IMG/VR virus record: IMGVR_UViG_3300044997_001199
Span: 124,001 to 188,000 of that record
Direction: 5' to 3' (one strand)
Length of the DNA: 64,000 nt
Both the position numbers and the translations under genes were made by a program. The stretch's first letter is position 1; each line of letters opens with the position of its first letter. Below the pieces are notes generated by a model. That model was not told where the DNA came from, did not search any database, and saw nothing but the letters and a program-made list of their open reading frames with translations. Positions 10,871 through 30,421 of the stretch are shown in pieces.

Positions 10871-10926
10871 AAGGTCTCCGTGTTGAGTAGTTACCATAAG
10901 TATACAATACAGACTTTGAAAACACA

Positions 10927-14648: not shown

Positions 14649-15434
14649 TTATTTTGGAGAAATCAAATCTGCGGACTGTGTCCAAGTCACGATTTCCCAA
14701 CGACCGTCCCAGTGTTCTACCAAGGCAGTCATTGACTCAACCCAGTCGCCGTCGTTCATGTAGATTACACCATCAATTTCTTTGATTTCTGCGTTGTGTA
14801 TGTGCCCACAGATCACGCCGTCAAACCCTCGCTTTTTACAGTAGCCGGCAAGATTCTTTTCAAACTGAAAAATAAAATCTATAGATTTTTTAACTCGTGT
14901 TTTGAGATATTTGCTTAAACTCCAGTAACCCAGTCCTAGTCTGCGTCTAAGAGCATTGAATCTACTGTTTAAGTCTAGCACAAAATCATACATCTTGTCA
15001 CCTAAAAAGGACAACCACGGGGCTAAACGAGTGATTCCGTCAAAAAGATCTCCATGAGTGACCAGATAATGTTTTCCGTCTAAACCAATGTGCTCGGTCT
15101 GATTGAAAACTTCAATCATACCAAAACCAATACCGTATGGAATCAATGGGCGAAGAAACTCATCGTGATTGCCTGCTACATACACAACGCGGGTTCCACG
15201 CTTGGCATGTCCCATTATACGTCTTACAACATTGGTATGGCTTTGTTTCCAGCGCCACTTGTTTTGTTGAATTTTCCACGCATCAATGATGTCACCAACA
15301 AGATAAAGTGTTTCACAGGTATTATGTTTGAGAAAATTATTTAACTGCTCTGCTCTGCAGTCGCGGGTTCCAAGATGTACATCACTGATGAATATGGCGC
15401 GATAGGTGGTCACTAGGTATTTAACCCGGCGCAT
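14649..15434 (-). CDS. LpxH/YbbF-like metallophosphoesterase (UDP-2,3-diacylglucosamine hydrolase family)
   Basis: ISDVHLG; LVGDIID; AGNHDEFL; THGD; CGHIH; NDGDWVES. Confidence 0.88.
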   Translation of the reverse strand: MRRVKYLVTTYRAIFISDVHLGTRDCRAEQLNNFLKHNTCETLYLVGDIIDAWKIQQNKWRWKQSHTNVVRRIMGHAKRGTRVVYVAGNHDEFLRPLIPYGIGFGMIEVFNQTEHIGLDGKHYLVTHGDLFDGITRLAPWLSFLGDKMYDFVLDLNSRFNALRRRLGLGYWSLSKYLKTRVKKSIDFIFQFEKNLAGYCKKRGFDGVICGHIHNAEIKEIDGVIYMNDGDWVESMTALVEHWDGRWEIVTWTQSADLISPK

Positions 15435-15445
15435 TGTCCTGTTCT

Positions 15446-16216
15446 CTATGCACAATAACGTTCCAACGCAGCGTCGGTCTTGGTCATGTCTGCGCAGGTC
15501 CAGGTCTGGTAACTGTGTTTGAGATGCGGTGGCATGGGTATTTCTTTCACTGGAACACCAAAACTGTTGGCCACTTGACGGAAACTCAGCGTGGTACCGG
15601 TGCCAATGTTGAAAATACCACTTTCTGGTACGGCAAAAAATCGTTGATGACAGCGAACCACTTCTTCCACAGGCACAAAATCGCGCTGATAGGCATGGCT
15701 ATTTTCAAACACCGTGACCTCGCCGTGTTGCTCTGCCTGCAGGCGGAACTGTGTGAACGGACTGGCCTGCGACCCTTTGTGCTCTTCGCCGGACCCATAC
15801 ACATTGAAATATCGGAATCCTTGTACATGGATGTTGGGTGCAGGATCGCATTCGATGTGCCGCTCCACGATGTATTTGGTCCATGCATAGGGAGTGCGTG
15901 GATCGGGCGGAGCAGTTTCTGAAAAATTGGTCCCCGGTCCATACACACTGGCCGATGATGCCCATTGGAGATTTACACCATGCTTGCGACACTGATTGTA
16001 TAACCACAGTGTGAAATCCACATTCTGTCGCATGATCTGTTCCACATCAGCAAAGGTAGTGCTGGAAATGGCACCCACATGTATGACCCAATCCAGACCG
16101 GCCACTGTGGGCAAGGGTTCTCCCCATTCAAAGGTCGACACGTCGTGGCTCGAGCTCAATGCAGCGACAAGATGCGAGCCTATGAATCCTCGATGACCGG
16201 TAACCAAGATTTTCAC
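15446..16216 (-). CDS. NAD-dependent epimerase, HldD/RfaD (ADP-heptose 6-epimerase)-like
   Basis: TGHRGFIGS; HVGAISST; ASSASVYG; YAWTK; RYFNVYG..EEHKG.QAS; RDFV. Confidence 0.85.
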   Translation of the reverse strand: MKILVTGHRGFIGSHLVAALSSSHDVSTFEWGEPLPTVAGLDWVIHVGAISSTTFADVEQIMRQNVDFTLWLYNQCRKHGVNLQWASSASVYGPGTNFSETAPPDPRTPYAWTKYIVERHIECDPAPNIHVQGFRYFNVYGSGEEHKGSQASPFTQFRLQAEQHGEVTVFENSHAYQRDFVPVEEVVRCHQRFFAVPESGIFNIGTGTTLSFRQVANSFGVPVKEIPMPPHLKHSYQTWTCADMTKTDAALERYCA

Positions 16217-17244
16217 GATGTCACTGCCTCCCGTAAGTTAGACACAAAACCATCACGTGCGAGATTTTTGCCCTTGGCTTCGCACTGGATGTCGAATTCA
16301 TCGCTGAACGTGCCGGCCCAGGCATTCACGGCGTGATTCCAATAGAAATCTGAATGAGCTCGGAGTTTCTGCTTGTGGAATCCTCGCTCCAGCAGCCCGG
16401 CAAGATCAGGGCGGGTGTGGATATCATGCCCCACCAATAGGTCTTCTCGACTAACGCTATAGTGAACTACAGGGCGAACACCACGCCAAGACTCAATGAC
16501 GTGCTGCGTCCTAGGGTCTTTGGGCTCAATATATTCGCCGGTGCGCACCCAATGGTGATGAATGTCCAACACAAGGGCCACATGATCAGCCACAAGCAAA
16601 GTAAGGTCCAGACCATTTGAAATTTCGTCGTTCTCAATGGTGATTAGATTCCGGGCCTCGGGGCTGAGACGCCCCAGAGTACGAAGGAATTTGTCAGGCC
16701 CACCTTTGCCCGACAAATGCACATTGATCTTGAATCCTGAATCATGCCACGCGGCACCATAACCCATCCAGCGCGCCATGTCTGCATGATATTCAAATTC
16801 ATCAATGCTTCTATTTACAATATCGTCGTTCTCTGATGCAAGAACACAGAACTGTCCAGGATGGAAACTCAGTCTCACGCCCAGTTCACGCGCACGGTCG
16901 CCAATGGGTTGGAATATGGTCTCAAGGTGGTGCTGAATGTCGGCCTGCTGCCACCAGTCCTGCCAGGACGCCTCGGTGTAGCCCTGCAACATTTCAGACC
17001 CAAGACGCACCATGCGGAATTCTGGCTGCAGTGAGCCCACACATTCTACCATGCGCAGAGCTGCTGCGGCATTGTGATTCATGATGTCCCACTGGCGTTG
17101 CTCGGCTAGATCTGCATGCTCGCGCAGCCAACGCATGGTAGTGGAGCGACCATTGAGTTCACGATTGGCGGCATTGACCTTCATGCCGCCACATTCAGCA
17201 GGATCTTCCAACCACTTGCAACAAAACCCAAAACGTCCTGTCAT
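16213..17244 (-). CDS. uvsE: UV damage endonuclease
   Basis: GFCCK; RLSFHPGQF.VLAS; INVH; LITIENDE; VLDIHHHW; P.VHYS; AHSD; CEAKGK. Confidence 0.93.
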   Translation of the reverse strand: MTGRFGFCCKWLEDPAECGGMKVNAANRELNGRSTTMRWLREHADLAEQRQWDIMNHNAAAALRMVECVGSLQPEFRMVRLGSEMLQGYTEASWQDWWQQADIQHHLETIFQPIGDRARELGVRLSFHPGQFCVLASENDDIVNRSIDEFEYHADMARWMGYGAAWHDSGFKINVHLSGKGGPDKFLRTLGRLSPEARNLITIENDEISNGLDLTLLVADHVALVLDIHHHWVRTGEYIEPKDPRTQHVIESWRGVRPVVHYSVSREDLLVGHDIHTRPDLAGLLERGFHKQKLRAHSDFYWNHAVNAWAGTFSDEFDIQCEAKGKNLARDGFVSNLREAVTS

Positions 17245-17489
17245 TGACTACCCCATCGAAGTTGAAACCATACCGCATGTTCCTGTTCGCAAAACCAAAC
17301 CAATTTTTTCATAGAACCATCTACCAAGTCAAACGTTTCAACATAGGGTATGTTGTTGTTGAACAGCCAAACAAAGGCCGGTACGGAAATGCCGGTTATT
17401 TCCACACTGTGGCGATAGTCATCTGCATTATATATGCACTGTAGTTGGCGTCTATGCTTCACGCGGCACTGTCTTTGGTCAGAGCACAC
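17241..17489 (-). CDS. Small hypothetical protein (start uncertain)
   Basis: C-terminal ...F-EQEHAVWFQLRW motif typical of small phage proteins; stop overlaps uvsE start. Confidence 0.5.
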   Translation of the reverse strand: MCSDQRQCRVKHRRQLQCIYNADDYRHSVEITGISVPAFVWLFNNNIPYVETFDLVDGSMKKLVWFCEQEHAVWFQLRWGSQ

Positions 17490-17920
17490 ACGGTTTGAGA
17501 ATGTTCCTATGCCAAGCGTACTGACTCGTGTTGCATGAGTTTATTGGCTTCCTGTCGCATGGCCTGCACCCCAGATTCAGCAATGTCACGGATGCTAGCA
17601 CGAGGCAACGTGCGAACACGGTCTCCCATACCTCAATGAGATTGAGCCGGACGTTGAGTTCAGACTGCGGCATCTCACGACCATCGGGCGGCTTCACTGC
17701 GCCGGCCTCTGCCAGAGCCTGGCAGATAGCATCTTCGGCCACACGGCCAGCAGCAATCATGGCAGCATAGTTTGGATCAATACAGTGCCTGCGACTCTGC
17801 CCCACCCGGGTAGCACATGACCAGGTGTGTGCCTTGGGGAAATGAGTCAAGCAGTTCTTGGTCATATTCATTGACAGGTACATATCTGCGTCCTCTCTTG
17901 CGATAAAACGTTTCTTTCAT
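17459..17920 (-). pseudogene. Conserved phage gene with two frameshifts and a nonsense codon
   Basis: MKETFY...CYPGG | QSRRHCIDPNYAAMIAAGRVAEDAI...EVW | DRVRTLPRASIRDIAESGVQAMRQEANKLMQHESVRLA*EHSQTVCALTKD across three frames. Confidence 0.7.
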
Positions 17921-18615
17921 GCTAGATCTCGCAACAGTTGCCAGGTGTGGCGCCAGTCTCTGACAGCATAACACTGGCCGCGTGCCTGGTCAACGATGGC
18001 GTCAGCCAAGGGTCGATCGTTGCCCATGGCATCTATGCGATCGCCAAAAAACGCTACGTCGTCGGAGATCCAGCGCAAGACCTGTGACTTGTCGGTTCCG
18101 CGGCGGAAGATGTCGATAGAGATTTCGCCGCCCACCACGGCGTGTACGTCGGGCCAGCCGCGATTGATTTCCTGTGCAATGACAGCACGCTCACCGTGCA
18201 ATTGATCCCAACGATAGTAGTGGTCTCGATCCCAGGCCGTGGCACGACGTCCTACCACGCTGAAATTCAGCATGCCTGTGCGCTGTTCAAAGTGTAGGCC
18301 AGTACGGTGTCGATAGCCGCTGACACGTAAACGATTTTCTAGCCACGACCTGAGATCTCGGGGACACTGCCATTCGCTCTGGTGCACCAGTTGTCCCGCA
18401 CGATACACTGCATTGCCCGAACAGTTGAAACTGGTGTCCACGGTGTTCATGACCGCCTGGCCCAGCTGTTCCAGGGTCTTGCTATAGTCGCTGCCAGTGA
18501 CCAGACTCACGGTGTGTGCTCGACAAAACTCTCGAAACCAACCGCCAAATGCAGTGTCAATCACACCACGGCTGGGAGTAAGTGTGCCGTCAACATCAAA
18601 TAGATAGTGTGTCAT
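17917..18615 (-). CDS. Eukaryote-type phosphomannomutase (HAD IIB)
   Basis: LFDVDGTLTPSR; VTGSD; EQRTGMLNFSVVGR; GGEISIDIF; FFGD....GND. Confidence 0.88.
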   Translation of the reverse strand: MTHYLFDVDGTLTPSRGVIDTAFGGWFREFCRAHTVSLVTGSDYSKTLEQLGQAVMNTVDTSFNCSGNAVYRAGQLVHQSEWQCPRDLRSWLENRLRVSGYRHRTGLHFEQRTGMLNFSVVGRRATAWDRDHYYRWDQLHGERAVIAQEINRGWPDVHAVVGGEISIDIFRRGTDKSQVLRWISDDVAFFGDRIDAMGNDRPLADAIVDQARGQCYAVRDWRHTWQLLRDLA

Positions 18616-18638
18616 TGGTATCATTAATTCTTAGATAA

Positions 18639-18857: not shown

Positions 18858-18931
18858 TGGTAGGCCCGAAGGGTAACGCTCCCTCTTCTACGGTTTAAAA
18901 GACCGTTGCTTCACTTTAAAGCTTCAAGCCC
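18858..18931 (-). tRNA. trnK: tRNA-Lys(UUU), non-canonical D and T loops, encoded CCA
   Basis: GGGCTTG-AA-GCTT TAAAGTG AAGC-A-ACGGT CTTTTAA ACCGT-AGAA-GAGGG AGCGTTA CCCTT-CGGGCCT-A-CCA folds as a cloverleaf. Confidence 0.88.
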
Positions 18932-19570: not shown

Positions 19571-20488
19571 TTAACCTTGTCGGTGCAGATCCAGGGTCAC
19601 ACAGTGGAAACCACCACCCAGGGTGCGGCTGTGTCGCAGTTCCATAGGAATGACATCAAGACCCTGCGCCTGTATCTGTTGTATCAAGTCGATCTGCATG
19701 TGATCCACGATCACAGTGTTGGGATCCACGGTGAGAGTGTTCATGCCGATCCATTTTGATGCATAGGGATATTGGTAAAAATCACGGGGCACACAGTCTT
19801 CCACCCAGATTTTGTCCCAGGATTTCAATACAGGAGGCAAGTTGTGTTCTGTGACTCTCGATGCATTGAGCAAGACCAGTCCTTCACGCAACGGACAGAT
19901 GGTCGAATCTATGTGTACCCCTGCATAGAAATCGCAGAGGTGTATGCGTATCTGTGGAAACTGTTCGCAAAGCCAATGATAGGCGGCCATGTTGCCGCTA
20001 GCACTGCGCAAAAACAACCAATGATCATTGAGACGACACACATTGGCTGCATCCAAGATCATACCTTGATCTCTGGGCATGATCCGAGTGCTGATCCCGG
20101 GTTGTGTCAAGAAGTCAAGACTCTGTATTTCCTGATCCCGACAAGGGTACATCATGGCAGTATCGACCACGACATCGCCTGCTATGATCACCCGGTCCCG
20201 TGGACAGTAGTTGTACATGCCCTGTGTGATCACAAAGTCTTTGTAGGCCGGACGTAGGACTTCGACGCCGGCATCAGTCAGCACAGCGATCAAGCGTTCG
20301 AGATCCTCCTCGGCTTCCATCTGAATCCACTCGGGTACCGGTCCAGACGGCGGCGGCGTCTGGGTCCAGGAAGTTTTGCTGGACTCCTGTGCAAACATCG
20401 GATCCTCTGCGGGCCAGTTGGCCCCCGAGGCTGATCCTACCACCACGGTGCGCAGGCGGTCCCATTCATTGTGGCTGTGTATTTTCAT
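19571..20488 (-). CDS. Amidinotransferase (glycine / inosamine-phosphate amidinotransferase family)
   Basis: HSHNEWD.L..VVVG; YNYCPRD; DAAN; HIDS; N.L.VDP; LGGGFHCVTLD. Confidence 0.92.
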   Translation of the reverse strand: MKIHSHNEWDRLRTVVVGSASGANWPAEDPMFAQESSKTSWTQTPPPSGPVPEWIQMEAEEDLERLIAVLTDAGVEVLRPAYKDFVITQGMYNYCPRDRVIIAGDVVVDTAMMYPCRDQEIQSLDFLTQPGISTRIMPRDQGMILDAANVCRLNDHWLFLRSASGNMAAYHWLCEQFPQIRIHLCDFYAGVHIDSTICPLREGLVLLNASRVTEHNLPPVLKSWDKIWVEDCVPRDFYQYPYASKWIGMNTLTVDPNTVIVDHMQIDLIQQIQAQGLDVIPMELRHSRTLGGGFHCVTLDLHRQG

Positions 20489-21018
20489 TGTATGCCGGTA
20501 ATCTGTAGAGTGTATCGATCGGTCTGACCCACATTGGCAGCAAGATGAGGCACTGTGTTTTGCCAGACCACGGTATCGCCGGCCTGCCATTTGGTATAGG
20601 GGTGACCGTCGATTTCAAAATAATGACCGCTGGCCCAGGGTTCCAGGAAAATCACGGCTCGCCATATACGATCGGGGTCTGTGATGCCATGTATGTCGCG
20701 GAATCGTGCATAGGTGTCGCTGTGTGCGGGCAGCACTGTGCCTGGGCACATGCGATATACGGACCAGGAAAAACACTGCCAGTCAAACTGCTGCTGTACG
20801 GCTGGCATCCATTCGGGCTGACTCTGACGCATGTCATACATGTCGCCTGTGAATCGAGTCTGGGTATAACCCAGACTTCGCCACAATTTAACCGATTCGG
20901 AATCATTGAATGGCTCGTTGCAGTAAGGCAGATCGCGATGATCTGTCCAGACCAACTCAGTGTGGGTGTAGTACCATTTAGGCACGACGAGTGTTACCGT
21001 AGTGTACCACCTTGACAT
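20485..21018 (-). CDS. 2OG-Fe(II) dioxygenase
   Basis: PAHSD (HxD), distal H in PHLAAN, RYTLQITG. Confidence 0.8.
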   Translation of the reverse strand: MSRWYTTVTLVVPKWYYTHTELVWTDHRDLPYCNEPFNDSESVKLWRSLGYTQTRFTGDMYDMRQSQPEWMPAVQQQFDWQCFSWSVYRMCPGTVLPAHSDTYARFRDIHGITDPDRIWRAVIFLEPWASGHYFEIDGHPYTKWQAGDTVVWQNTVPHLAANVGQTDRYTLQITGIQ

Positions 21019-22222
21019 TGGGCAGATCCAACGACAAACGGCGCCACGGGTCCACTATCACGGACTCTGCAGGAATGTCACAGTAGGGATTGGTGTCGTC
21101 TTGCTCACCGGTGTATTCATAGGTAATCTTACGGTTGTGCGCCCATAGTATCACAGCTGGCTCCCTGAGATCAGAGACCACGTCAGTGGGGTCATCGGCC
21201 ATGGGGTCCAGATACACCACAGCATGGCCTAGCTCTCTTACATAGTGACCCACCAGAGTAGAATAACTGCCAATACAGTATTCCACGTCGGGCTTGTAGG
21301 CCTTGCCGTGGATCACGATGGGTACATTACCCATGCGATTGGCATCGGCCTGATCTACCAAGAACTTGGCCAGATTGCGTGCCTGGATTTCGCGAGCGTG
21401 CATGATGGTGTCAAACAGGTCATAGCCGATGTCATACTCCTGCGCCAGCCAACGCAGAGCAATGTTGTCACGTGGATGGCAAGCGCCGGCATCGCCCATG
21501 CCTGCGGTCATGTATTTGGGACCCATGATGCGCATGGTTGAATTGGCCAGGGCGTCGGTGACCACGTCCACATTGATGTTTCCAATGCGCAGTGCAAAAT
21601 CCTGGATCATGTTGGCCAGACCTACTTTGGCTGAGATAAAGGTGTTGTAGAAAATCTTGATGGCTTCGCATTCGTCCCAGGTACCTGTGACATAGCGCGG
21701 ATCATTGACCATGAGTGCACGATAGATATCAATCAGATCTTGCATCTCGGCAGGGTCGCCGGATTCCGATCCGATCATGACCATTTCAGGATTGATCATG
21801 TCCCATTTTACCGAACCCATGGCAATGAGATAGGGATTGTAAAGGAACTGATGTTGTGGATCCAGCAAGGTAGCAAAATGGCGTCGCGTGGTTCCCGGCA
21901 GCACAGTGGAAATCAAGACCACTCGCTTGGGCAATGTGGCATAACGATTGACATTGTTCAGGGCCGCCTTCACTGCATCGTGTCCAAAGTCACGAGGTTC
22001 CATGTGGCTGCTGGGCACTGATCCGTCGTATCCTTCCTCGTGCGGAGTGGGAACTGCAATGAAAATCCAATCGCTGTCGCGCACGGTTTCTTCGATGCCG
22101 CAGACTTTTACTAGGTCGCTGGACCTCGGGTAAATATCATATCCACGCACAGTGTACTTTTCTGCAAATACCTCGGCACAATCCATGCCCAACTTGCCCA
22201 ACCCAATAAAACCAATGTTCAT
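20978..22222 (-). CDS. ugd: UDP-glucose/GDP-mannose dehydrogenase family
   Basis: GFIGLGKLG; IAVPTP; ISTVLPGT; EAIK.FYNTFIS.K; GACHPRD; G.AYKPD. Confidence 0.92.
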   Translation of the reverse strand: MNIGFIGLGKLGMDCAEVFAEKYTVRGYDIYPRSSDLVKVCGIEETVRDSDWIFIAVPTPHEEGYDGSVPSSHMEPRDFGHDAVKAALNNVNRYATLPKRVVLISTVLPGTTRRHFATLLDPQHQFLYNPYLIAMGSVKWDMINPEMVMIGSESGDPAEMQDLIDIYRALMVNDPRYVTGTWDECEAIKIFYNTFISAKVGLANMIQDFALRIGNINVDVVTDALANSTMRIMGPKYMTAGMGDAGACHPRDNIALRWLAQEYDIGYDLFDTIMHAREIQARNLAKFLVDQADANRMGNVPIVIHGKAYKPDVEYCIGSYSTLVGHYVRELGHAVVYLDPMADDPTDVVSDLREPAVILWAHNRKITYEYTGEQDDTNPYCDIPAESVIVDPWRRLSLDLPNVKVVHYGNTRRA

Positions 22223-22225
22223 CTG

Positions 22226-23557
22226 ATGAATATTCCGTTAGAAAGATTGTATCATTATGTCAGCGATATTGCTGGTCCTGATGTAATAATTTATCGTTGG
22301 TCCTCTCACGGATCAAAAATTCTCTACGATCTCAGAGCACTGACCGATATCCTGTCGGGATCTCAACTTCAGTTCTATAGTTCCGATTTGGTCCAACATG
22401 TCGCGATTATAGCACATGATCAGGAACCATTGGATCTTTTGTACTATGATCGACAACATATTTGCGAACACTTTGCCAGGATTTTCGGGCTGGATCCACA
22501 GACGCTGCTGCAGGATGGATCAACCGCCGACATAAAAGACATCGTGTACCTGCACTTGCGATCCGTACTACATCCCAGTGTTCACCGACCCATTTTGTTG
22601 CATTCAGAAGTCGGCGGCCGCCAACTCAAGATCTATCAGCAGCTGGGCTACATACCGGCCTACTGGTGGTGTCATGCCGTGTTGGCCAGAGATTGGTTTA
22701 GATATGCTCAGTGCGATCCACAGTTAAAGCACCGTCCGGCACAATGGCACAAAGATTTTTTAATCTACTGTAGATCCTGGACCGGAACCAGAAAATATCG
22801 CCTAGCATTTTTTGAGATGTTGGCCGATGAACAATTGTCGGACTACTGCCAGGCATCACTGGCCTCACATGATCAAGGATTTCACTATCTCGACATTGGT
22901 GTTCGCGACCCTGATCTAGCAGTGCAAAGAACCGATCTGGACCAGATATTCCGATCGTCTGGGATGGGTCCCGCGGCCAGTGCAGACTACGACAATCAGG
23001 ACTATGCTGCTGCAGCACTGGAAATAGTTTTAGAAACAGTGTTTGACGATGATCGCCAACATCTTACCGAAAAAACCCTGCGTCCCATTGCCTGCGGCAA
23101 ACCATTTTTGCTGGCTGCCACTCCCTATAGCTTGCGATATCTACGCAGTTATGGTTTTCTGACCTTTGCACCATTGATCGACGAAAGCTATGATGAGATC
23201 ACTGATACCAAACAACGTCTCCGGGCCTTGGTCAAAGAAATGCGACGCATTGCCAATTTATCAAGACAACAAAAACAGATCTTGTACCAAGAACTACATC
23301 AACGCGCACAGATCAATCAAAAACATTTTTTTTCTGAGGATTTTTATCAGCAAGTGACTCAAGAACTCAGTTGCAATGTCAAGACTGCCGTGGAACAATC
23401 GAGATCACAAGTGTCGCTGGCCTGGATCGAACAACGTCTGCGCGTGGCCAATCGGTGGAACGACCTTGGACTCTCAGAATGCCAGTCTCTCTATGCCTGG
23501 ACGGTGGCCAACATACAAGTTTCGAGATCAGGAACAGATACCAACCCATCCCATTGA
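22226..23557 (+). CDS. GT10-like putative glycosyltransferase
   Basis: EIVLETVF....HLTEKTLRPI..GKPF resembles the GT10 E-N/T-S...Y-x-TEK motif. Confidence 0.55.
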   Translation: MNIPLERLYHYVSDIAGPDVIIYRWSSHGSKILYDLRALTDILSGSQLQFYSSDLVQHVAIIAHDQEPLDLLYYDRQHICEHFARIFGLDPQTLLQDGSTADIKDIVYLHLRSVLHPSVHRPILLHSEVGGRQLKIYQQLGYIPAYWWCHAVLARDWFRYAQCDPQLKHRPAQWHKDFLIYCRSWTGTRKYRLAFFEMLADEQLSDYCQASLASHDQGFHYLDIGVRDPDLAVQRTDLDQIFRSSGMGPAASADYDNQDYAAAALEIVLETVFDDDRQHLTEKTLRPIACGKPFLLAATPYSLRYLRSYGFLTFAPLIDESYDEITDTKQRLRALVKEMRRIANLSRQQKQILYQELHQRAQINQKHFFSEDFYQQVTQELSCNVKTAVEQSRSQVSLAWIEQRLRVANRWNDLGLSECQSLYAWTVANIQVSRSGTDTNPSH

Positions 23558-23904: not shown

Positions 23905-24696
23905 ATGCCACTTGCATTTGATTTGATTTCTGATTTACACGTTGAAACATGGTCCAAGATATTTAATTGGACTGGTCAGGCCACCAGTCCATTTTGTGTG
24001 GTAGTTGGAGATGTGGCGCAGGACCGCAATGTTTTGATAAAAACGTTAACACACCTTGGCAGTTGTTATCAAGCAGTTTTTTACATCGATGGCAATGACG
24101 AGCATCGTGACTATTACGACAATCTCAGTTCCAGTTACAATGACCTAGCCGCAAAACTCAAACCCGTACCCAATCTGGTGTATCTACAGAACAACGTAGT
24201 GGTAATCGAGGGAGTGGCCATCCTGGGTACCAACGGTTGGTGGGCCTTTAATTTTGATCTCAGTGTCGATTCGGGGTCGTCCGTAGAACTTTGGCAGGAC
24301 GAAACCGGACACGATCTTGCAGCTTCTCAATATATTTCGGCCATGGCCCAGAACGATGCCAACTATCTTGTTCGCAGCGTCAAGCGTTTGCAAAAACGCT
24401 ATGATGTCCGTCACATCGTGGTAGCTACACATACTGTGCCGGCGACGCAATTGCTTGCCCACGACATCGAGTTGAAATCAACTCCCAAACTCAACTGCAT
24501 GGGCAATCGATATCTCGAAGAAGCACTGGACTGCGATACCGAAAAAAAAATACATACCTGGTGCTTTGGACACTATCACAGACCGATAGATCAGATCTAT
24601 CGACAAATACGGTTTGTTAACAACTGTCGCGGAAAAGAGAAAACCGACTATGCCACGTCGGTTTTCTATCCCAAACGGATCGTGGTAGAAAACTAA
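23905..24696 (+). CDS. Calcineurin-like metallophosphoesterase
   Basis: ISDLH; VVGD; GNDEH; THTVP; WCFGHYH. Confidence 0.88.
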   Translation: MPLAFDLISDLHVETWSKIFNWTGQATSPFCVVVGDVAQDRNVLIKTLTHLGSCYQAVFYIDGNDEHRDYYDNLSSSYNDLAAKLKPVPNLVYLQNNVVVIEGVAILGTNGWWAFNFDLSVDSGSSVELWQDETGHDLAASQYISAMAQNDANYLVRSVKRLQKRYDVRHIVVATHTVPATQLLAHDIELKSTPKLNCMGNRYLEEALDCDTEKKIHTWCFGHYHRPIDQIYRQIRFVNNCRGKEKTDYATSVFYPKRIVVEN

Positions 24697-24998
24697 TCAG
24701 TGGATTCGGGTTCCAGTTTGATCTGCAAAGGGTAGCTCTGTTCTCTGGCACTGAGCGTGACTTCGATGCCTTTTTGTTCGGCAATCTCATAGGGCAACAC
24801 CGCGACCACGGCTGATCCAGACTCGTGAATGTCCAGAGTGATTTCTTTGGCTAGATTCACACTGTAATCAAAGTACTCTACTAGCGATTCAATCACAAAC
24901 TCCATGCTAGTGGCATTGTCATTGAGATAAATTACCCGATACATGGGGGGTTCAGTGACTTTTTCGTTGATACGAGTGCGGAATTCAATCTGTGACAT
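24693..24998 (-). CDS. clpS: ClpS adaptor
   Basis: EPPMYRVIYLND..TSMEFV...L...F; DIHESG.AVV; EIAEQK; YPL. Confidence 0.92.
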   Translation of the reverse strand: MSQIEFRTRINEKVTEPPMYRVIYLNDNATSMEFVIESLVEYFDYSVNLAKEITLDIHESGSAVVAVLPYEIAEQKGIEVTLSAREQSYPLQIKLEPESTD

Positions 24999-25014
24999 TT
25001 TATAATCCTTGTAT

Positions 25015-25045
25015 ATACAGTGGCGGACACTGTCCGCCACTGTAT
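25015..25045. repeat. Perfect 14-bp inverted repeat with 3-nt loop
   Basis: ATACAGTGGCGGAC-ACT-GTCCGCCACTGTAT. Confidence 0.9.
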
Positions 25046-25059
25046 TTAACAAAACACTG

Positions 25060-25497
25060 TCAAGAAGTGTAGGTAATTGCGATGCTCTTGGGTTTGGCCG
25101 ACTCAGGAACCAGGCGTTCCAATTGGATGGTCAAGATACCATCTCGGACCACCGCGGCCTTGATTTCAACATGGTCTGCCAGCATGAAACAACGAGAAAA
25201 CTTGCGAGTCGATATTCCCTTGTGCAAATATTCAACTCCGACCGATTCGGTTTTCTTTTCACCGGTCACTGTGAGTTCACCGTTGTGGAATGTGACATCA
25301 ATTTCGCCTTGACTGAATCCGGCCGCGGCCAGGCGGATTTCATAGGTTTCCTCTCCGGTCTTGACCACATCGTGCGGTGGATAGTTGCCAACCTGAGATG
25401 AATGCTCAAACTGGTCTAGGATACGGTCAAACAAACGATCCACGCCCACGGTGTGACGATAGAAAGGGGTCAAGTCTAATGCAGTAAGTTTTGTCAT
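25060..25497 (-). CDS. ibpA: Small heat shock protein Hsp20 (IbpA-like)
   Basis: VGVDRLFD; NYPPHDV; I.LA.AGF; L.VTG; YLHKGISTR.F.R.F.L; DGIL.I.L; P..I.I. Confidence 0.95.
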   Translation of the reverse strand: MTKLTALDLTPFYRHTVGVDRLFDRILDQFEHSSQVGNYPPHDVVKTGEETYEIRLAAAGFSQGEIDVTFHNGELTVTGEKKTESVGVEYLHKGISTRKFSRCFMLADHVEIKAAVVRDGILTIQLERLVPESAKPKSIAITYTS

Positions 25498-25565
25498 GAT
25501 AATCTCCTTTTAAGCAAGTATGACAACAGTAGACCCGGAAATCGGCATCTACTAGGATATTTATA
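25498..25565 (-). promoter_or_regulatory. Conserved leader copy B (hsp20)
   Basis: TATAAATA..TAGTAGAT-G-CCG atttc CGG-GTCTACTG..CTTGCTTAAAAGGAG..ATG. Confidence 0.8.
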
Positions 25566-27423
25566 CTACTTCCGTGAAGTCACTGTCAACCACAGTTTGC
25601 TCAGCAGCACCGCGTTGGCGTGCTTCGTGCAGTGCTGTGAGTTTTCCAGCGAGTTCTGTGAGTGCGGTTTTCATGGCTTCCACATCGTCTCCCTTGCCTG
25701 CGTTTTCGCAGTCAGTAAGCACCTGGAGGATTTCTGCATGTTGTTTGGACGTGAGATCACTTTCCAGTTCCTTGAGATCTGCTCTTGCCGAATGTGTCAT
25801 GCTGTCGATCTGATTGCGAGTTTCAATTAGCTCTCTCTGGCGGCGATCCACGTCAGCATTGGCCTCGGCGTCCTGCACCATCTTCTGGATCTCCTCCTCA
25901 GAGAGGCCCGAGTTGGCTCGGATGGTGATATTGTTCTTCTTGCCGGTGGCCCGGTCTTGAGCTGACACATGCATGATACCATTGGTATCGATATCCAGTG
26001 TGACTTCGATCTGTGGTATGCCGCGGCGCGCAGGTGCGATGCCTTCGAGATTGAACTCTCCTAACAATTTGTTGTATTGGAATAGTTCACGTTCGCCCTG
26101 CGCTACCTTGATGGTCACTGCGGGCTGATTGTCCTCGGCTGTGCTGAAAGTTTGACTGTGCTTGGCAGGAATAGTAGTGTTCTTGTTGATCAGCTTGGTA
26201 AACACTCCTCCCTGTGTTTCAATACCCAGACTCAGCGGAATCACGTCCAGCAGCAGCACATCTGTGCGATCGCCACTCAGCACTGCGCCCTGAATCGCAG
26301 CACCCACGGCCACTGCTTCGTCGGGGTTGACGTCCTTGCGCGGATCCCGACCGAAAAACGTCCGGACTGCCTCTTGCACCTTGGGCATGCGCGTCTGGCC
26401 ACCCACCAGTATCACATCGCTGATATCAGCAACAGCAATACCTGCATCTTTTACGGCCTGACGGCAGGGTTCGATAGAACGCTGGATAAGGTCCTCGACC
26501 ATGCCCTCAAACCGCGCACGAGTGATCTTTACCACCAGGTGCTTGGGGCCGGTCTGATCCATGGCGATATAGGGTTCGTTGACTTCGACCTGGGAACCAC
26601 TGCTCAGTTCGATTTTGGCACGTTCGGCTGCGGCCTTGATGCGCTGCAGAGCAATAGCATCTTTGGTAAGATCAATACCGGTTTGGTCGCGGAACTCGTT
26701 GCAGAGGAAGTCGATCAGGCGTTGGTCGAAGTCCTCACCGCCCAGGAATGTATCGCCATTGGTGGACAGAACTTCAAACTGATATTCGCCGTCGACGTCT
26801 GCGATCTCGATGATCGAGACGTCGAAGGTGCCGCCGCCGAGGTCATAGACGGCGATCTTGCGATCTCGCTGTTCGTTTTTGTCAAGTCCAAATGCCAAGG
26901 CTGCTGCAGTGGGCTCGTTGATGATGCGACGCACTTCTAGTCCAGCGATGCGGCCAGCGTCTTTGGTGGCCTGACGCTGCGCGTCGTTGAAGTAGGCCGG
27001 CACAGTGATCACGGCCTCGGTCACGGCATGTCCCAGATAATCCTCGGCAGCTTTCTTCATCTTACGTAACACTTCGGCCGAAATCTGCGGAGGGGCCTTG
27101 TTGTCGCCATTGACTGCGATCCATGCATCGCCGTTGTCGGCCCTCACAATATCGTAGGGCAGAGAGTTGATATCTCGTTGTACGGCCTTTTCTTCGAATC
27201 TTCGTCCGATCAGACGCTTGGCTGCATACACTGTGTTCTTGGGATTGGTAACAGCCTGGCGTTTAGCAGGTGCACCGACCAAGATTTCATCCGCGGTATA
27301 GGCCACAACAGAAGGAGTGGTTCTGGCTCCTTCGGCATTTTCGATAACTCTCGGGTTTCCATTTTCGATCACAGCCACGCAGGAATTGGTGGTGCCAAGA
27401 TCGATACCAATGATTTTGCTCAT
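25561..27423 (-). CDS. dnaK: Chaperone DnaK (Hsp70)
   Basis: [15 protein letters not shown]; [20 protein letters not shown]; [10 protein letters not shown]; LVGGQTRMP; full length. Confidence 0.99.
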
Positions 27424-27492
27424 AGTGTTCTCCTTGGTTAAGCAAGAATAAGTCGAGATCCCCGGAATGGGCAATCTCTAGTGCTATTTATA
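27424..27492 (-). promoter_or_regulatory. Conserved leader copy C (dnaK)
   Basis: TATAAATA..GAGATT-G-CCC attcc GGG-GATCTC..CTTGCTTAA cc AAGGAG..ATG. Confidence 0.8.
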
Positions 27493-27517
27493 GACAAAAT
27501 CTCAAATCAAGTCAAGC

Positions 27518-27742
27518 TCAATACAGGGTTTTAGGCAATTCTTGGCTAGCCAAATATCTACGCCAACGAGATTTGGCCGCGGATTTTTTGCGTTTTCTCA
27601 CCGAAGTGGGTTTTTCGTAGAACTCATATTTCCTGAGATCCATGAGTATGCCCGAAGTCTGGACCTTTTTTTTGAATTTACGCAGTGCTTTTTCAACGTT
27701 TCCGTCGTTGACAAACACTCTGCGACCATTTAATTCACTCAT
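27518..27742 (-). CDS. rpsU: 30S ribosomal protein bS21
   Basis: V.V.DGNVEKALRKFKKKV..SGIL.DLR..EFYEKPTSVRKRKK.AA..R. Confidence 0.93.
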   Translation of the reverse strand: MSELNGRRVFVNDGNVEKALRKFKKKVQTSGILMDLRKYEFYEKPTSVRKRKKSAAKSRWRRYLASQELPKTLY

Positions 27743-28943
27743 TTACTTTTTTTAACTCCTTGGGTTCATACACCATGTCGGCGTCAATAACGACTTCGGT
27801 AATACCTTGCCGCACGTATTCTCGCAGTCGATACATGTGCGGTATTAGCACTCGCTCGAGTTCTCCGTGCAAGCCACGTGCTCCTGTTTTGTTTTTCATG
27901 GCATGCTCTACCACGAGATCCAGTGCCGCGGATGTGAATTCTAACTTGATCTGGTCTTGGTCAAACAGCCATTGATACTGTTCTATATAGTTATTTTTGA
28001 TGTTGAGCAGTATGGCCAAAAGATCCTGTTTGGTTAGTTCTCTCAAAGACACCCAGGTGGGGAATCTGCCTACAAATTCGGGGATCATGCCAAACTTTAC
28101 AATGTCATCAGGAGTGGTACTGTCAAGATACACACTGGGATCCTGTTCCACTGGAACGCTGAATCCAATACTGGTTCCCTTGATTCGAGATTTCACGAGA
28201 TTTTCGATGCCTACAAACGCACCGCCGGCGATAAACAAGATATCAGTGGTGTCGATTTCCACGGTGTCGTTCTGAGGATTCTTGCGACCCCCGTGAGGTA
28301 CGATTCTGCACTTGGTACCCTCCACCAATTTGAGAAGGCTTTGCTGTACACCCTCACCTGACACATCGCGAGTGATACTGATATTCTCCCCTCTGCGGGC
28401 TATTTTGTCTATTTCGTCAATAAAAACGATTCCGGTCTGGCAGCGCTCGATGTCATAATCGGCTGCTGCGTACAACCGCGAAATCACGCTTTCTACGTCA
28501 TCGCCTACATAACCGGCTTCGGTCAGACTGGTGGCATCTGCGATCACAAAAGGCACACCCAGGTACCGAGCCACTGTGCGCGCCAGCAGGGTTTTGCCCG
28601 ATCCCGTGGGTCCCAGCATCAGTATGTTGACTTTTTCAATTTCCGTGTTTTTTTCTTGATTGCGTATGCGCTTGTAGTGATTGGCAATGGCCACACTGAG
28701 AACGATTTTTGCGTCTTGCTGACCAATCACATACTGGTCGAGAAACTGTTTGATCTCCATTGGGTCCACATGCGATTCAATCATGGTCTGGCCCTGGGCT
28801 TGGTTAGATAACAGCAGTGTGTCACACAGAGTCACGCACTCGTTGCATATGGCAACCTTGTCTCCCACAATGAGTTTTCCGACTGCGTCCTTGTGCTTGC
28901 CACAAAAACTACAGTCGTTGGGTGTGAGATCAGTATCTGTCAT
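27735..28943 (-). CDS. clpX: ATP-dependent Clp protease ATPase ClpX
   Basis: CSFCGK...ICNECV Zn domain; GPTGSGKT; GYVG; DEIDK; [10 protein letters not shown]; IGF loop; GARGL. Confidence 0.98.
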
Positions 28944-30421
28944 TGATTGTGCTTGCCAAGTCGATTGGAAATTTGTTCGGTTTCCGCTGCAGTGAGGAAG
29001 TCAGGATCATACTGACCCTGTTCCAACTGTTGGATAAGATGGTCGATATAGGCATCGTTGTATGTATAACTATCGGCGATCTGCTTGCTGATTTCGATCC
29101 AGTCGTTTTCATTGTATCGATAGAGAACGTGCGGGATCCGATCGGTACGTATCCATAGATCGCCCTTGACTGCATGTTCGGGGAATCGGTTTCCGAATCC
29201 AGTGCCAAGAGTCGGTTCCGGCAAGTCATCAGTGACCAGCGACATCCATGGCAGTTGATCGATTAGACCTTGTTCATATCGATGGCGTTGGTCCTTGAGA
29301 GTTCTTCCGGGATTGGCCTGTTTCCAGAGACGCATGGCTTCTTTGACTTTGTTGTCGTGGTGACCGAACTCGTCGTCGGCAGACTCAGCATCGTCCAGTA
29401 AACGATCCATTGGGTGTTCGTGCTCCACAATAACCAATGTTTCCTGGGTCTGGTTCTCTGTGTCCGCCGTGGTCTCAGGAACATAGACTATCGGGCCCAC
29501 TGGATCAACTCCGGGTACATGATGTTTCCATTCTTTTTGGAGGTAATCATGCGTGACTGTTTGTTCGATCGATGAATCTTGAGCAGTTTCTTGTGGGCTC
29601 GGGTCTGCAGACTCTGCTAGGTCCGACACAGCGGCGTCGAGAGACTGCGATTGAGTCAGTTGTCGTTCACGTTCCCATCCATGGCTTTCGGTGAACGCCA
29701 ACAACATCATTATGGCCAGGGGATCAAATACCATAACCAAGACTATGATCACCCATCGCACTGCTTTTTCCAGGACATTCACTTCAGGGTTGTCACCATA
29801 GACCAGAGCAGCAATATATTTGATTGGGCCGACTTCGGCTTCTACTTTTCTCAATTCACTGGCTATGGGAGCACGCTGTTCATTGAGGTCAGCGATTATC
29901 GACTGTGCCTGGGCAATTTCTCGTTGCAGTCTTACACGCTCGGCTTGTTGTTGTCTGCGTATCTGCACTGCACGTTCTGCACCGCGATCATCATTGCTGC
30001 GACTCAGACGTTCGTTGACCTGGCTGTCCATCTGTTGAACAGAGGTCTTGGCCGCAGCAATGTTATCCTGTTGGGTGCGTATTTTTTCGTCAATCAGATC
30101 GACCTGGGCAGCAACGTCGCCGGTGGGTACTGCCTGGTCCAGATGTGCCTTTGACAAAAATCCAAAAATACCCATGGATGTTATGATCATGAGTAGGATC
30201 ACTGCTGGTACTAGATAGGCTTTCATGGTCCATCGCACACGATGCCAGTACTCATGTAGCCAGACCGTGATTGCGAGTTTGGCTATTTCTAAAATGGTGC
30301 CCATGACCGCTATGGGCACTGTGGCCGCGGCAAATATAGCCGTGAGACCGGCTATGGAGTAAAAGGCTGCGATACCGCTGAGGCTCAGGGCCACGGCCAG
30401 GACAATATATGTTAGAAACAT
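28940..30421 (-). CDS. Membrane-anchored coiled-coil protein
   Basis: Three N-terminal TMs, long coiled coil, EVGPIKYIA, further TM, acidic tail. Confidence 0.75.
   Translation of the reverse strand: MFLTYIVLAVALSLSGIAAFYSIAGLTAIFAAATVPIAVMGTILEIAKLAITVWLHEYWHRVRWTMKAYLVPAVILLMIITSMGIFGFLSKAHLDQAVPTGDVAAQVDLIDEKIRTQQDNIAAAKTSVQQMDSQVNERLSRSNDDRGAERAVQIRRQQQAERVRLQREIAQAQSIIADLNEQRAPIASELRKVEAEVGPIKYIAALVYGDNPEVNVLEKAVRWVIIVLVMVFDPLAIMMLLAFTESHGWERERQLTQSQSLDAAVSDLAESADPSPQETAQDSSIEQTVTHDYLQKEWKHHVPGVDPVGPIVYVPETTADTENQTQETLVIVEHEHPMDRLLDDAESADDEFGHHDNKVKEAMRLWKQANPGRTLKDQRHRYEQGLIDQLPWMSLVTDDLPEPTLGTGFGNRFPEHAVKGDLWIRTDRIPHVLYRYNENDWIEISKQIADSYTYNDAYIDHLIQQLEQGQYDPDFLTAAETEQISNRLGKHNQ

What the first reader, a model, noticed from the sequence alone, without database searches (positions are those of the whole stretch)
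19571..23557. Amidinotransferase + 2OG-Fe oxygenase + Ugd + GT10-like cluster: a candidate guanidino-sugar pathway
Three overlapping genes (ugd, dioxygenase, amidinotransferase with intact Cys-His-Asp motifs) form an operon that is back-to-back with a GT10-like gene; PMM, an HldD-like epimerase and an LpxH-like hydrolase lie within 5 kb. This amidinotransferase family transfers amidino groups from Arg to glycine or aminocyclitols. Inference: synthesis of an amidinated or hydroxylated uronic-acid glycan for virion glycosylation, host LPS remodelling or DNA hypermodification.
Basis: inference. Interest (0 to 1): 0.65.

Follow-up and report, generated by a model that had tools for sequence, protein, structure and literature searches.

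The report
Phage amidinotransferase sugar-tailoring gene module
A lake-water jumbo phage carries a tightly packed four-gene set (glycosyltransferase, sugar dehydrogenase, small iron oxygenase, arginine-dependent amidinotransferase) that recurs in many uncultured phages and probably makes an unusual guanidino-decorated sugar whose target is unknown.

Summary
The four genes exist at the stated coordinates and all look functional. They are a StrB1-like amidinotransferase (true start 20488, Cys/His/Asp residues intact), a 177-aa 2OG/Fe oxygenase (HxD...H plus Arg), a divergent UDP-glucose-dehydrogenase-like enzyme (catalytic Cys kept), and a 443-aa GT-B fold glycosyltransferase with no Pfam match.

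The set is not a chance neighbourhood. Of 57 related phage loci with enough flanking DNA, 47 carry all four genes in the same order. The oxygenase-amidinotransferase pair recurs in a second phage lineage, in 70 of 80 loci, among glycosyltransferases, a short DegT-like protein, a carbamoyltransferase and sometimes a Ugd homologue. Bdellovibrionota-labelled contigs hold the same partners.

PMM, the HldD-like epimerase and the LpxH-like hydrolase are present in the window but are not syntenic in relatives.

Best reading (about 0.5): a nucleotide-sugar tailoring and transfer module that makes an amidinated (guanidino), hydroxylated, uronic-type sugar. The target is unresolved. DNA hypermodification is the weakest option: no hydroxymethylase or DpdA was found, and the transferase family is acidic. 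No enzyme activity has been shown. The families are abundant and uncharacterised, so I rate this a new variant of a known kind.

The parts
19571..20488 (-). StrB1-like L-arginine amidinotransferase, 305 aa (P0124). The ORF stays open upstream to 20590, but Met35 is the conserved start.
   Evidence: PDB 1bwd StrB1 at E 3.3e-61; SxtG, HsvA and AGAT at about 1e-24 to 1e-25. D98 (PRD), D146 (DAAN), H192 and D194 (HID), S244 and C296 (FHC) align with the AGAT/StrB1 catalytic and Arg-binding residues, and most are invariant in alignment A3. Homologues are 303-307 aa.
20485..21018 (-). Small 2-oxoglutarate/Fe(II) oxygenase, 177 aa (P0002). Its stop overlaps the amidinotransferase start (ATGA).
   Evidence: PF05118 at 26.1 bits against a cut-off of 22.6. 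H99, D101, H158 and R168 are invariant in 31 homologues. The AF2 model has pLDDT 94 and a double-stranded beta-helix fold. Best structural matches are PiuC, prolyl hydroxylases, AsqJ and AspH at Z 11-13.
20978..22222 (-). Divergent NDP-sugar 6-dehydrogenase (Ugd-like), 414 aa (P0003). Its 3' end overlaps the oxygenase ORF by 41 nt.
   Evidence: PF00984 at 1.7e-14 and PF03721 at 2.1e-12. phrog_9148 at 1.7e-84. TIGR03026 scores 124.7 bits, below its cut-off of 189.8. The nearest solved proteins are UDP-glucose 6-dehydrogenases (3vtf, 2.5e-18); GDP-mannose DH scores 2e-10. It has an N-terminal GxGxxG and the catalytic Cys in GACHPRD, aligned to GSCFPKD.
22226..23557 (+). GT-B fold glycosyltransferase-like protein, 443 aa (P0004), with a C-terminal helical extension.
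   Evidence: No family-library match. The AF2 model has pLDDT 88. VIA-align: T4 beta-glucosyltransferase 1c3j Z 12.5, POGLUT1 10.5, H. pylori alpha1,3-FucT 10.4, T4 AGT 9.8, then many GT4 enzymes at Z 8-10. E266, E270, T281, E282, K283 and R286 are invariant in 37 homologues. More than 2213 homologous clusters exist, all from uncultured phage contigs.
22220..22228 (.). Head-to-head junction. The start codons of the dehydrogenase gene (22222-22220, minus strand) and the GT gene (22226-22228) are 3 nt apart, so there is no intergenic promoter space.
   Evidence: The sequence reads CAT ctg ATG. Gaps of 1-3 nt occur in most relatives (coordinates).
16213..17244 (-). UvdE-type UV-damage endonuclease. 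It is a frequent neighbour of the module but variably placed, and probably not part of the pathway.
   Evidence: PF03851 at 1.6e-28. It lies within the fetched flanks in 45 of 64 related loci, on either side and at variable distance.
14649..18624 (-). LpxH-like metallophosphoesterase (14649-15455), HldD-like SDR epimerase (15446-16216) and PMM (17917-18624). These are window-specific neighbours, not conserved with the module.
   Evidence: Family hits. PMM is present near the module in 0 of 64 related loci, HldD-like in 2 and LpxH-like in 2. An SDR epimerase homologous to the HldD-like gene does accompany the pair in 12 of 80 loci of the second phage lineage.

Best explanation
The four genes form a conserved nucleotide-sugar tailoring and transfer module of a lake-water jumbo myovirus.

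Proposed steps (all inferred):
1. The Ugd-like enzyme oxidises C6 of an NDP-hexose to the uronic acid.
2. An amino group on the sugar accepts an amidino group. The amine is probably installed by the phage's SDR and short DegT-like pair, encoded about 75 kb away, as in relatives where those genes are adjacent. The StrB1-like amidinotransferase takes the amidino group from L-arginine through a covalent Cys296 intermediate, giving a guanidino sugar and ornithine.
3. The translationally coupled 2OG/Fe oxygenase hydroxylates that substrate or its product.
4. The divergently encoded GT-B protein transfers the finished sugar to an acceptor.

The acceptor is unknown. A surface glycoconjugate (a virion fibre or the host envelope) is more likely than DNA.

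Shown here: gene integrity, catalytic residues, folds, and conserved linkage. Inferred: substrates, order of steps, product and target.
For: **Enzyme assignments**
- StrB1 at E 3.3e-61 with all catalytic and Arg-binding residues kept.
- Oxygenase facial triad plus Arg invariant, with a beta-helix fold at pLDDT 94.
- Ugd-like catalytic Cys and Rossmann motif.
- GT-B fold.

**Linkage within the jumbo-phage lineage**
- 47 of 57 related loci keep GT | Ugd-Oxy-AmT, and 6 more keep GT | Oxy-AmT.
- The Oxy stop overlaps the AmT start.

**Independent recurrences of the partnership**
- In a second phage lineage (Synechococcus phage S-SCSM2R type), Oxy sits directly upstream of AmT in 70 of 80 loci.
- That lineage's loci also carry a short DegT-like protein (74 loci), 3-4 glycosyltransferase paralogues (71), a NolO-like carbamoyltransferase (27), a Ugd homologue (11) and an SDR epimerase (12).
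- Bdellovibrionota-labelled contig L110 has a P4-like gene divergent from AmT-Ugd-SDR-short DegT-GT2-GT2. L077 has short DegT, P4-like and AmT inside a 171-kb bacterial contig.

**Other support**
- The window's own genome holds the short DegT-like gene (42% identical) next to an SDR at G000 67.8-69.3 kb.
- A 788-aa uncultured-phage protein named as a UDPG/GDP-Man dehydrogenase matches the P4 model at E 7.5e-13, which suggests a natural Ugd plus P4-like fusion.
- Ugd homologues in phages Bellamy and HTVC008M sit in sugar-decorating clusters with NadE-like, carbamoyltransferase, methyltransferase and GT genes.
Against: - No activity, substrate or product is known for any of the four families, and all close homologues are hypothetical proteins.
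- The amidinotransferase acceptor cannot be read from the sequence.
- Bacterial homologues at 35-40% identity mostly sit next to NRPS-like or SbnA/SbnB-like genes, which are amino-acid contexts.
- Ugd is missing from 6-9 related loci and the oxygenase from 3, so not every step is obligatory.
- The short DegT-like protein is only about 195-246 aa and may not be a working aminotransferase.
- In the window's genome the DegT/SDR genes are 75 kb away from the module.
- The Ugd-like protein scores below NCBIfam cut-offs, and its C-terminal domain is not detected by Pfam.
Confidence: 0.5

Rival explanations
1. Virion or host protein modification. The oxygenase hydroxylates a protein residue, as prolyl, lysyl and aspartyl hydroxylases do. 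The GT-B protein O-glycosylates it with glucuronic acid from the Ugd-like enzyme. The amidinotransferase converts a lysine or ornithine side chain, or the attached sugar amine, to a guanidine. The likely client is a fibre protein.
For: - The oxygenase's best structural matches are protein hydroxylases: PHD-type prolyl hydroxylases, the EF-Tu P4H, AspH and a viral collagen P4H, at Z 11-12.4.
- Ranks 2 and 3 for the GT are the protein O-glucosyltransferases POGLUT1 and POGLUT2.
- In 44 of 62 related loci the operon continues downstream of AmT with a 421-aa coiled-coil and beta-rich fibre-like protein. An Atlas lead links it to PTL_trimer at 0.91.
- The S-SCSM2R paper found a different amidinotransferase and a prolyl-hydroxylase-like protein in purified virions (PMC12801897).
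Against: - The fibre-like gene is absent from the window's 215-kb record, although the module is kept.
- Structural matches of small 2OG oxygenases and GT-B proteins do not discriminate. Small-molecule enzymes such as AsqJ, SnoK, PolD, PasI and EvdO2 score about as well.
- No pentein amidinotransferase is known to act on proteins (own knowledge).
Confidence: 0.17
2. Free small-molecule synthesis. The module makes a soluble guanidino metabolite rather than a glycan on a macromolecule. Candidates are a hydroxylated guanidino acid or an aminocyclitol/aminoglycoside-like glycoside. It could also simply rewire arginine, ornithine and 2-oxoglutarate metabolism as an auxiliary metabolic function.
For: - The nearest characterised enzyme, StrB1, works on a free aminocyclitol phosphate in streptomycin synthesis.
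- Bacterial homologues lie in NRPS-like and diaminopropionate (SbnA/SbnB-like) contexts.
- The S-SCSM2R authors filed the gene under antibiotic synthesis.
Against: - The phage versions are consistently flanked by glycosyltransferases and nucleotide-sugar enzymes, not by NRPS or cyclitol genes.
- No inositol dehydrogenase or kinase partner was seen.
- A pure metabolic role does not explain the conserved GT-B partner.
Confidence: 0.15
3. DNA hypermodification. The GT-B protein glycosylates a modified base in phage DNA, as the T4 glucosyltransferases do, and the sugar is further oxidised and amidinated.
For: - The best structural match of the GT model is T4 beta-glucosyltransferase (Z 12.5, 270 residues, rmsd 4.0), about 2 Z units above the next rows. 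T4 alpha-glucosyltransferase scores 9.8.
- The module lies among DNA-metabolism genes (UvdE, ligase, RNR, helicase, primase).
Against: - The 215-kb record has ThyX but no ThyA-family hydroxymethylase, no TGT/DpdA and no QueC. The record is only about 61% complete.
- The GT family is acidic, with median pI 5.85 over 120 members.
- In the second phage lineage and in the Bdellovibrionota-labelled contigs the partners are GT2-type and LPS-type transferases.
Confidence: 0.1

Closest known systems
StrB1, L-arginine:inosamine-phosphate amidinotransferase of Streptomyces griseus (PDB 1bwd)
   Same: It is the best match by far (E 3.3e-61, against about 1e-25 for AGAT, SxtG and HsvA). Both are compact (305 versus 348 aa) and lack the extra AGAT segments. 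The Cys, His and Asp residues and the Ser that binds the arginine carboxylate are kept.
   Different: The phage enzyme is about 40 aa shorter, with deletions around residues 85-90 and 122-139. It has no streptomycin-type partners (no inositol dehydrogenase, kinase or phosphatase set) and is always paired with a small 2OG oxygenase. Its acceptor is unknown.
Oxygenase-amidinotransferase pair of Synechococcus phage S-SCSM2R (ORF308/ORF309, PQ898602)
   Same: Same two families in the same order with overlapping genes: 30% and 35% identity. They are embedded in glycosyltransferase-rich DNA.
   Different: It comes from a T4-like cyanophage lineage. It has no homologue of the 443-aa GT-B protein and sits with a short DegT-like protein, a radical SAM enzyme and GT2/GT25-type enzymes. 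The published annotation calls it an antibiotic-synthesis gene, without tests.
T4 beta-glucosyltransferase and GT10 alpha1,3-fucosyltransferases (GT-B, inverting)
   Same: Two-Rossmann-domain GT-B fold (Z 12.5 and 10.4). An invariant acidic...TEK...R motif resembles the GT10 nucleotide-binding motif (motif from own knowledge).
   Different: There is no sequence-level family match and the motif spacing differs by two residues. The protein is acidic and has a roughly 110-residue C-terminal helical extension. No hydroxymethyl-base pathway was found in the genome.
UDP-glucose 6-dehydrogenase (Ugd) and the Ugd-centred sugar clusters of phages Bellamy and HTVC008M
   Same: Same family, about 71% DNA identity over 460 nt to the Bellamy gene. 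It sits in phage sugar-decorating clusters.
   Different: The partners there are NadE-like, carbamoyltransferase and methyltransferase genes instead of oxygenase plus amidinotransferase. Substrate specificity is untested, and the protein scores below NCBIfam equivalog cut-offs.
Bacterial amino-uronic acid O-antigen pathways (for example the Pseudomonas aeruginosa WbpA/B/E/D/G route to acetamidino-mannuronic acid; own knowledge)
   Same: The logic matches: NDP-sugar 6-dehydrogenase, keto-sugar formation, transamination, nitrogen-rich decoration, then transfer by a GT.
   Different: The nitrogen decoration there is an acetamidino group made by a PP-loop amidotransferase. It is not a guanidino group from a pentein amidinotransferase, and no 2OG oxygenase is involved.

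Membership tests
Pentein-fold amidinotransferases (AGAT/StrB1 family) | Significant full-length sequence similarity to characterised members | tested here: met
   StrB1 at E 3.3e-61 over residues 4-305; SxtG, HsvA and AGAT at 1e-24 to 1e-25. Pfam PF02274 matches only weakly (20 bits against a cut-off of 22.8).
Pentein-fold amidinotransferases (AGAT/StrB1 family) | Catalytic Cys-His-Asp plus the substrate-guanidino-binding Asp residues | tested here: met
   C296, H192, D194, D98 and D146 align with the StrB1/AGAT residues. C296, H192, D194 and D98 are invariant and D146 is conserved in at least 90% of 23 phage homologues.
Pentein-fold amidinotransferases (AGAT/StrB1 family) | Arginine as donor and a defined amine acceptor | not testable with these tools
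   The carboxylate-binding Ser (S244) is kept, which fits an Arg donor. The acceptor cannot be inferred.
2OG/Fe(II)-dependent oxygenases | HxD/E...H iron triad and a basic residue for the 2OG C5 carboxylate on a double-stranded beta-helix | tested here: met
   H99, D101, H158 and R168 are invariant. The fold has pLDDT 94, with Z 11-13 to many 2OG oxygenases. PF05118 scores 26.1 bits against a cut-off of 22.6.
UDP-glucose/GDP-mannose dehydrogenase family | N-terminal NAD domain, central domain with catalytic Cys, C-terminal nucleotide-sugar domain | tested here: inconclusive
   The N-terminal and central domains and the catalytic Cys are present. The C-terminal domain is not detected by Pfam, although residues 300-346 align with the C-terminal domain of 3vtf. 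TIGR03026 scores 124.7 bits, below its cut-off of 189.8.
CAZy GT10 fucosyltransferases | Match to the family profile (PF00852) and the FxxxFENSxxxxYxTEK motif | tested here: not met
   No Pfam hit at E 0.01. The motif is only similar (E270...T281-E282-K283, two residues longer). The Atlas feature score to GT10 clusters is 0.79, below the lead threshold. The fold matches H. pylori FucT at Z 10.4 but no better than other GT-B families.
GT-B fold glycosyltransferases | Two facing Rossmann-like domains | tested here: met
   AF2 model with pLDDT 88 and pTM 0.87. 31 solved chains score Z of at least 8, and nearly all of those listed are GT-B enzymes. All Foldseek hits are GT-B.
T4-type DNA glucosyltransferase systems | A pathway for a hydroxymethylated base in the same genome | tested here: not met
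   No PF00303-family protein and ThyX only. The record is about 61% complete, so absence is not proven.

The most novel reading that the evidence does not exclude
This would be a previously unknown sugar modification. A guanidino group is placed on a nucleotide-activated amino-uronic sugar by a pentein amidinotransferase, with a dedicated 2OG hydroxylase and a new GT-B family. The module would be used by a globally abundant lineage of freshwater and marine phages to decorate virion fibres, the host envelope or, least likely, their DNA. It would be the first guanidino-glycan outside aminoglycoside-type natural products.
Probability: 0.3. Interest if true: 0.8.

Novelty: new variant of a known kind. 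Interest (0 to 1): 0.6.

Why it matters
All four protein families are very abundant in aquatic viromes: more than 7500, 4000 and 2200 clusters at 90% identity for the amidinotransferase, oxygenase and transferase. None has a known function. Amidinotransferases are otherwise known from creatine, toxin and aminoglycoside chemistry, not from glycan decoration.

Showing what this module makes would:
- annotate thousands of phage genes;
- possibly add a positively charged guanidino sugar to the known repertoire of glycan modifications;
- give a handle on how large aquatic phages alter their own surface or their host's surface;
- supply a compact, arginine-driven guanidinylation enzyme of possible use in glyco-engineering.

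Tried and rejected
**Ideas rejected**
- PMM, HldD-like and LpxH-like genes as pathway members. Synteny does not support it.
- A 7-deazaguanine link, suggested by a FolE gene and by distant amidinotransferases in Campylobacter phages. No TGT/DpdA or QueC is present, and the single weak QueC hit is the NadE PP-loop. The Campylobacter-phage papers give no function.
- A hydroxymethyl-base pathway. No ThyA family member was found.
- Bacterial neighbourhoods of 35-40% homologues as a guide to the acceptor. The contexts are mixed (NRPS-like, SbnA/SbnB-like) and lack the oxygenase.

**Searches that returned nothing or were not run**
- Sequence searches of solved structures with the GT, the oxygenase and the two extra operon proteins of relatives gave nothing.
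- PHROGs gave nothing for the GT, the oxygenase, P0244 or P0245.
- Promoter and terminator scans were no better than shuffled sequence.
- The fold search 'atlas' library was unavailable.
- The careful tree search did not finish, so only the quick tree is reported.
- The large representative search and read laying were not used.

Full report
**What is there.** The window is bases 124001-188000 of a 215-kb IMG/VR virus record, estimated 61% complete. The stretch is found in lake-water metagenomes. The record's B-family DNA polymerase is 42-49% identical to those of Sinorhizobium phage Phosso, Agrobacterium phage Atu_ph07, GAP32, CBB and XbC2. It is therefore an uncultured freshwater relative of that jumbo myovirus group.

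**The amidinotransferase.** ORF 19571-20590(-) matches StrB1, the L-arginine:inosamine-phosphate amidinotransferase (1bwd), at E 4.8e-61. SxtG, HsvA and glycine amidinotransferase score only about 1e-25.
- The residues aligned with the AGAT/StrB1 catalytic Cys, His and Asp, the two guanidino-binding Asp and the carboxylate-binding Ser are all present: C296, H192, D194, D98, D146 and S244 in the 305-aa numbering. They are invariant or nearly so in 23 phage homologues.
- Homologues are 303-307 aa and start at the ORF's Met35. The gene is therefore 19571-20488, and its ATG overlaps the stop of the upstream gene.

**The oxygenase.** ORF 20485-21018(-) scores just above the Pfam cut-off for the Asp/Asn beta-hydroxylase family.
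- H99, D101, H158 and R168 are invariant in 31 homologues.
- The AlphaFold model (pLDDT 94) is a minimal double-stranded beta-helix.
- Its structural neighbours are prolyl hydroxylases, PiuC, AsqJ, AspH and sugar- or nucleoside-antibiotic oxygenases, all at Z 10-13. They do not single out a substrate class.

**The dehydrogenase.** ORF 20978-22222(-) has the N-terminal Rossmann motif, the central domain and the catalytic Cys of the UDP-glucose/GDP-mannose dehydrogenase family.
- It is nearest to UDP-glucose 6-dehydrogenases.
- It is divergent: it scores below NCBIfam cut-offs, and Pfam does not recognise its C-terminal domain.

**The transferase.** ORF 22226-23557(+) matches no family library and no solved structure by sequence.
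- Its model (pLDDT 88) is a GT-B glycosyltransferase fold with a helical C-terminal extension.
- The best structural match is T4 beta-glucosyltransferase (Z 12.5). POGLUT1/2, a GT10 fucosyltransferase, T4 alpha-glucosyltransferase and many GT4 enzymes follow at Z 8-10.5.
- An invariant E...TEK...R motif resembles the GT10 nucleotide-binding motif. However, the Pfam GT10 profile does not match and the spacing differs, so 'GT10-like' is only a resemblance.
- Its start codon is 3 nt from the dehydrogenase start codon on the other strand.

**Is the grouping real?** Yes.
- A scan of IMG/VR with the amidinotransferase gave 62 loci at 50-66% identity. Two more came from contigs that encode GT homologues.
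- Of 57 loci with at least 3.4 kb upstream, 47 have GT | Ugd-Oxy-AmT in the window's order. Six have GT | Oxy-AmT, two have Ugd-AmT, one has GT | Ugd-AmT and one has none.
- The oxygenase stop overlaps the amidinotransferase start throughout.
- PMM is near the module in 0 of 64 loci, and the HldD-like and LpxH-like genes in 2 each. These are local neighbours only. UvdE is often within a few kb but on either side.
- On the GT side the conserved neighbours are proteostasis genes: a metallophosphoesterase, ClpS-like, Hsp20, DnaK and ClpX.
- In most relatives the operon continues past the amidinotransferase with a 245-aa protein (37 loci) and a 421-aa fibre-like protein (44 loci). Neither has a family match. 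The window's genome lacks both and has a tRNA-like element, small ORFs and PMM there instead.

**Independent recurrences.**
- Synechococcus phage S-SCSM2R has the same oxygenase-amidinotransferase pair, at 30% and 35% identity, inside a glycosyltransferase cluster.
- Eighty IMG/VR loci of that type show the oxygenase directly upstream in 70. They also show a short DegT-like protein in 74, a multi-copy 278-aa glycosyltransferase in 71, a NolO-like carbamoyltransferase in 27, a radical SAM enzyme in 24, GT2 in 13, an SDR epimerase in 12 and a homologue of the window's Ugd-like gene in 11.
- A scan of prokaryote genomes found mostly 35-40% homologues in NRPS-like or SbnA/SbnB-like contexts, without the oxygenase.
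- Several Bdellovibrionota-labelled contigs repeat the phage partnership. L110 has a P4-like gene divergent from AmT-Ugd-SDR-short DegT-GT2-GT2. L077, a 171-kb contig with PurM and PilZ genes, has short DegT, P4-like and AmT. L114 and L121 have the oxygenase directly upstream.
- In a quick ML tree the jumbo-phage clade and the cyanophage-type clade are each well supported. They are not sisters, and the latter sits beside Bdellovibrionota rows (the careful search did not finish and the root is unknown).
- The window's own genome carries the short DegT-like gene (42% identical) next to an SDR at 67.8-69.3 kb, and a full-length DegT plus SDR at its end.
- A BFVD protein of 788 aa, named as a UDPG/GDP-Man dehydrogenase, matches the GT model at E 7.5e-13. 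An Atlas cluster of 705-aa epimerase proteins matches it at TM 0.58. These suggest natural fusions of P4-like domains with nucleotide-sugar enzymes. I could not fetch those sequences to verify this.

**Mechanism.** The amidinotransferase is repeatedly linked to glycosyltransferases, a sugar-aminotransferase-like protein, SDR enzymes and a sugar 6-dehydrogenase. That makes a nucleotide-sugar pathway the best-supported reading. An amino sugar (amino-uronic where Ugd is present) would be amidinated from arginine to a guanidino sugar, hydroxylated by the coupled oxygenase, and transferred by the GT-B protein. Every chemical step is inference.

**The target is open.**
- Protein (fibre) glycosylation is favoured by the fibre-like gene in the operon of relatives and by the protein-hydroxylase and POGLUT structural neighbours.
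- A free metabolite is favoured by the StrB1 precedent and by the bacterial contexts.
- DNA modification rests only on the T4 glucosyltransferase fold match and the DNA-metabolism surroundings. Against it: no ThyA-type hydroxymethylase, DpdA or QueC in the record, the acidic pI of the GT family, and the LPS-type partners elsewhere.

**Known versus new.** Phage amidinotransferase genes have been noted before: in Campylobacter phages CP220 and CPt10 beside radical SAM genes, and in S-SCSM2R as an 'antibiotic synthesis gene'. Neither report includes functional work. Pelagiphage and cyanophage sugar genes are generally ascribed to host O-chain modification. I found no description of the conserved GT | Ugd-Oxy-AmT module, or of the Oxy-AmT pair as a unit, in the searched library. 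The families are large: more than 7556, 4055 and 2213 clusters. I rate it a new variant of a known kind (a sugar-tailoring cluster) with an unusual and untested chemistry.

**Limits.** All homologues are from metagenomes, and no cultured host or phage is available. The record is incomplete. Counts of loci include near-duplicates: 45 distinct amidinotransferase DNA sequences among the 57 loci. Structural matches show fold, not function.

Noticed in passing
window 18861-18931 (-): Rfam finds a tRNA (41.8 bits against a gathering score of 29) in the roughly 950-bp gap between PMM and the amidinotransferase. ARAGORN calls no tRNA anywhere in the window.
   Followed up: partly
window 22220-22228: The divergent dehydrogenase and GT genes have start codons only 3 nt apart, and 1-3 nt apart in most relatives. 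Each gene's promoter and ribosome-binding site must therefore lie inside the other gene.
   Followed up: partly
window 23905-30421 and 10283-10927: The window holds a run of host-like proteostasis genes: a metallophosphoesterase, a ClpS-like adaptor (24693-25052), Hsp20 (25060-25497), DnaK (25561-27474), ClpX (27735-28943) and, further off, ClpP (10283-10927).
   Followed up: partly
window 2926-3798 (-): An NAD synthase (NadE) family gene. In phages Bellamy and HTVC008M a NadE-like gene sits directly beside the Ugd homologue, together with a carbamoyltransferase and a methyltransferase.
   Followed up: no
G000:C1 57391-69328 (outside the window): A second sugar-related region of the same genome. 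It holds two weak paralogues of the 443-aa GT (57.4 and 58.4-59.4 kb), a radical-SAM-like gene, GTP cyclohydrolase I, the short DegT-like gene (67809-68375) and an SDR (68378-69328). An oxygenase paralogue lies at 98.3-98.6 kb.
   Followed up: partly
L005:7923-9927 and 36-43 other related loci: In most relatives the operon continues after the amidinotransferase with a 245-aa protein (Rossmann/methyltransferase-like by eye, no family hit) and a 421-aa coiled-coil plus beta-rich fibre-like protein. Both are missing from the window's genome.
   Followed up: partly
L003, L004, L005, L006, L022: Relatives carry striking auxiliary genes near the module: a CHASE2-guanylate/adenylate cyclase, curli CsgG/CsgF, a phosphate-selective porin and PstS-like binding protein, a fatty-acid desaturase, a class 3 lipase and a D-Ala-D-Ala carboxypeptidase.
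   Followed up: no
L069-L073: Contigs binned into Legionella, Bacteroidetes, Haliscomenobacter and Terrimicrobiaceae MAGs carry the phage-type module at 56-60% identity. They group inside the jumbo-phage clade in the tree. They are probably phage contigs mis-binned into MAGs, or possibly a hint at hosts.
   Followed up: partly
L075 and 32 other bacterial loci; L079: Bacterial StrB1-like amidinotransferases are followed in 33 loci by a roughly 1400-aa adenylation-PCP-hexapeptide-transferase protein. In about 16 loci they are preceded by an SbnA/SbnB-like pair. This suggests uncharacterised guanidino-amino-acid natural products.
   Followed up: no
window 15446-16216 (-): The HldD-like SDR is only 256 aa and matches the heptose-epimerase profile from position 66 onward. 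It seems to lack part of the N-terminal nucleotide-binding region. It corresponds to the middle of a 715-position PHROG profile (phrog_540) that represents much longer phage proteins.
   Followed up: no
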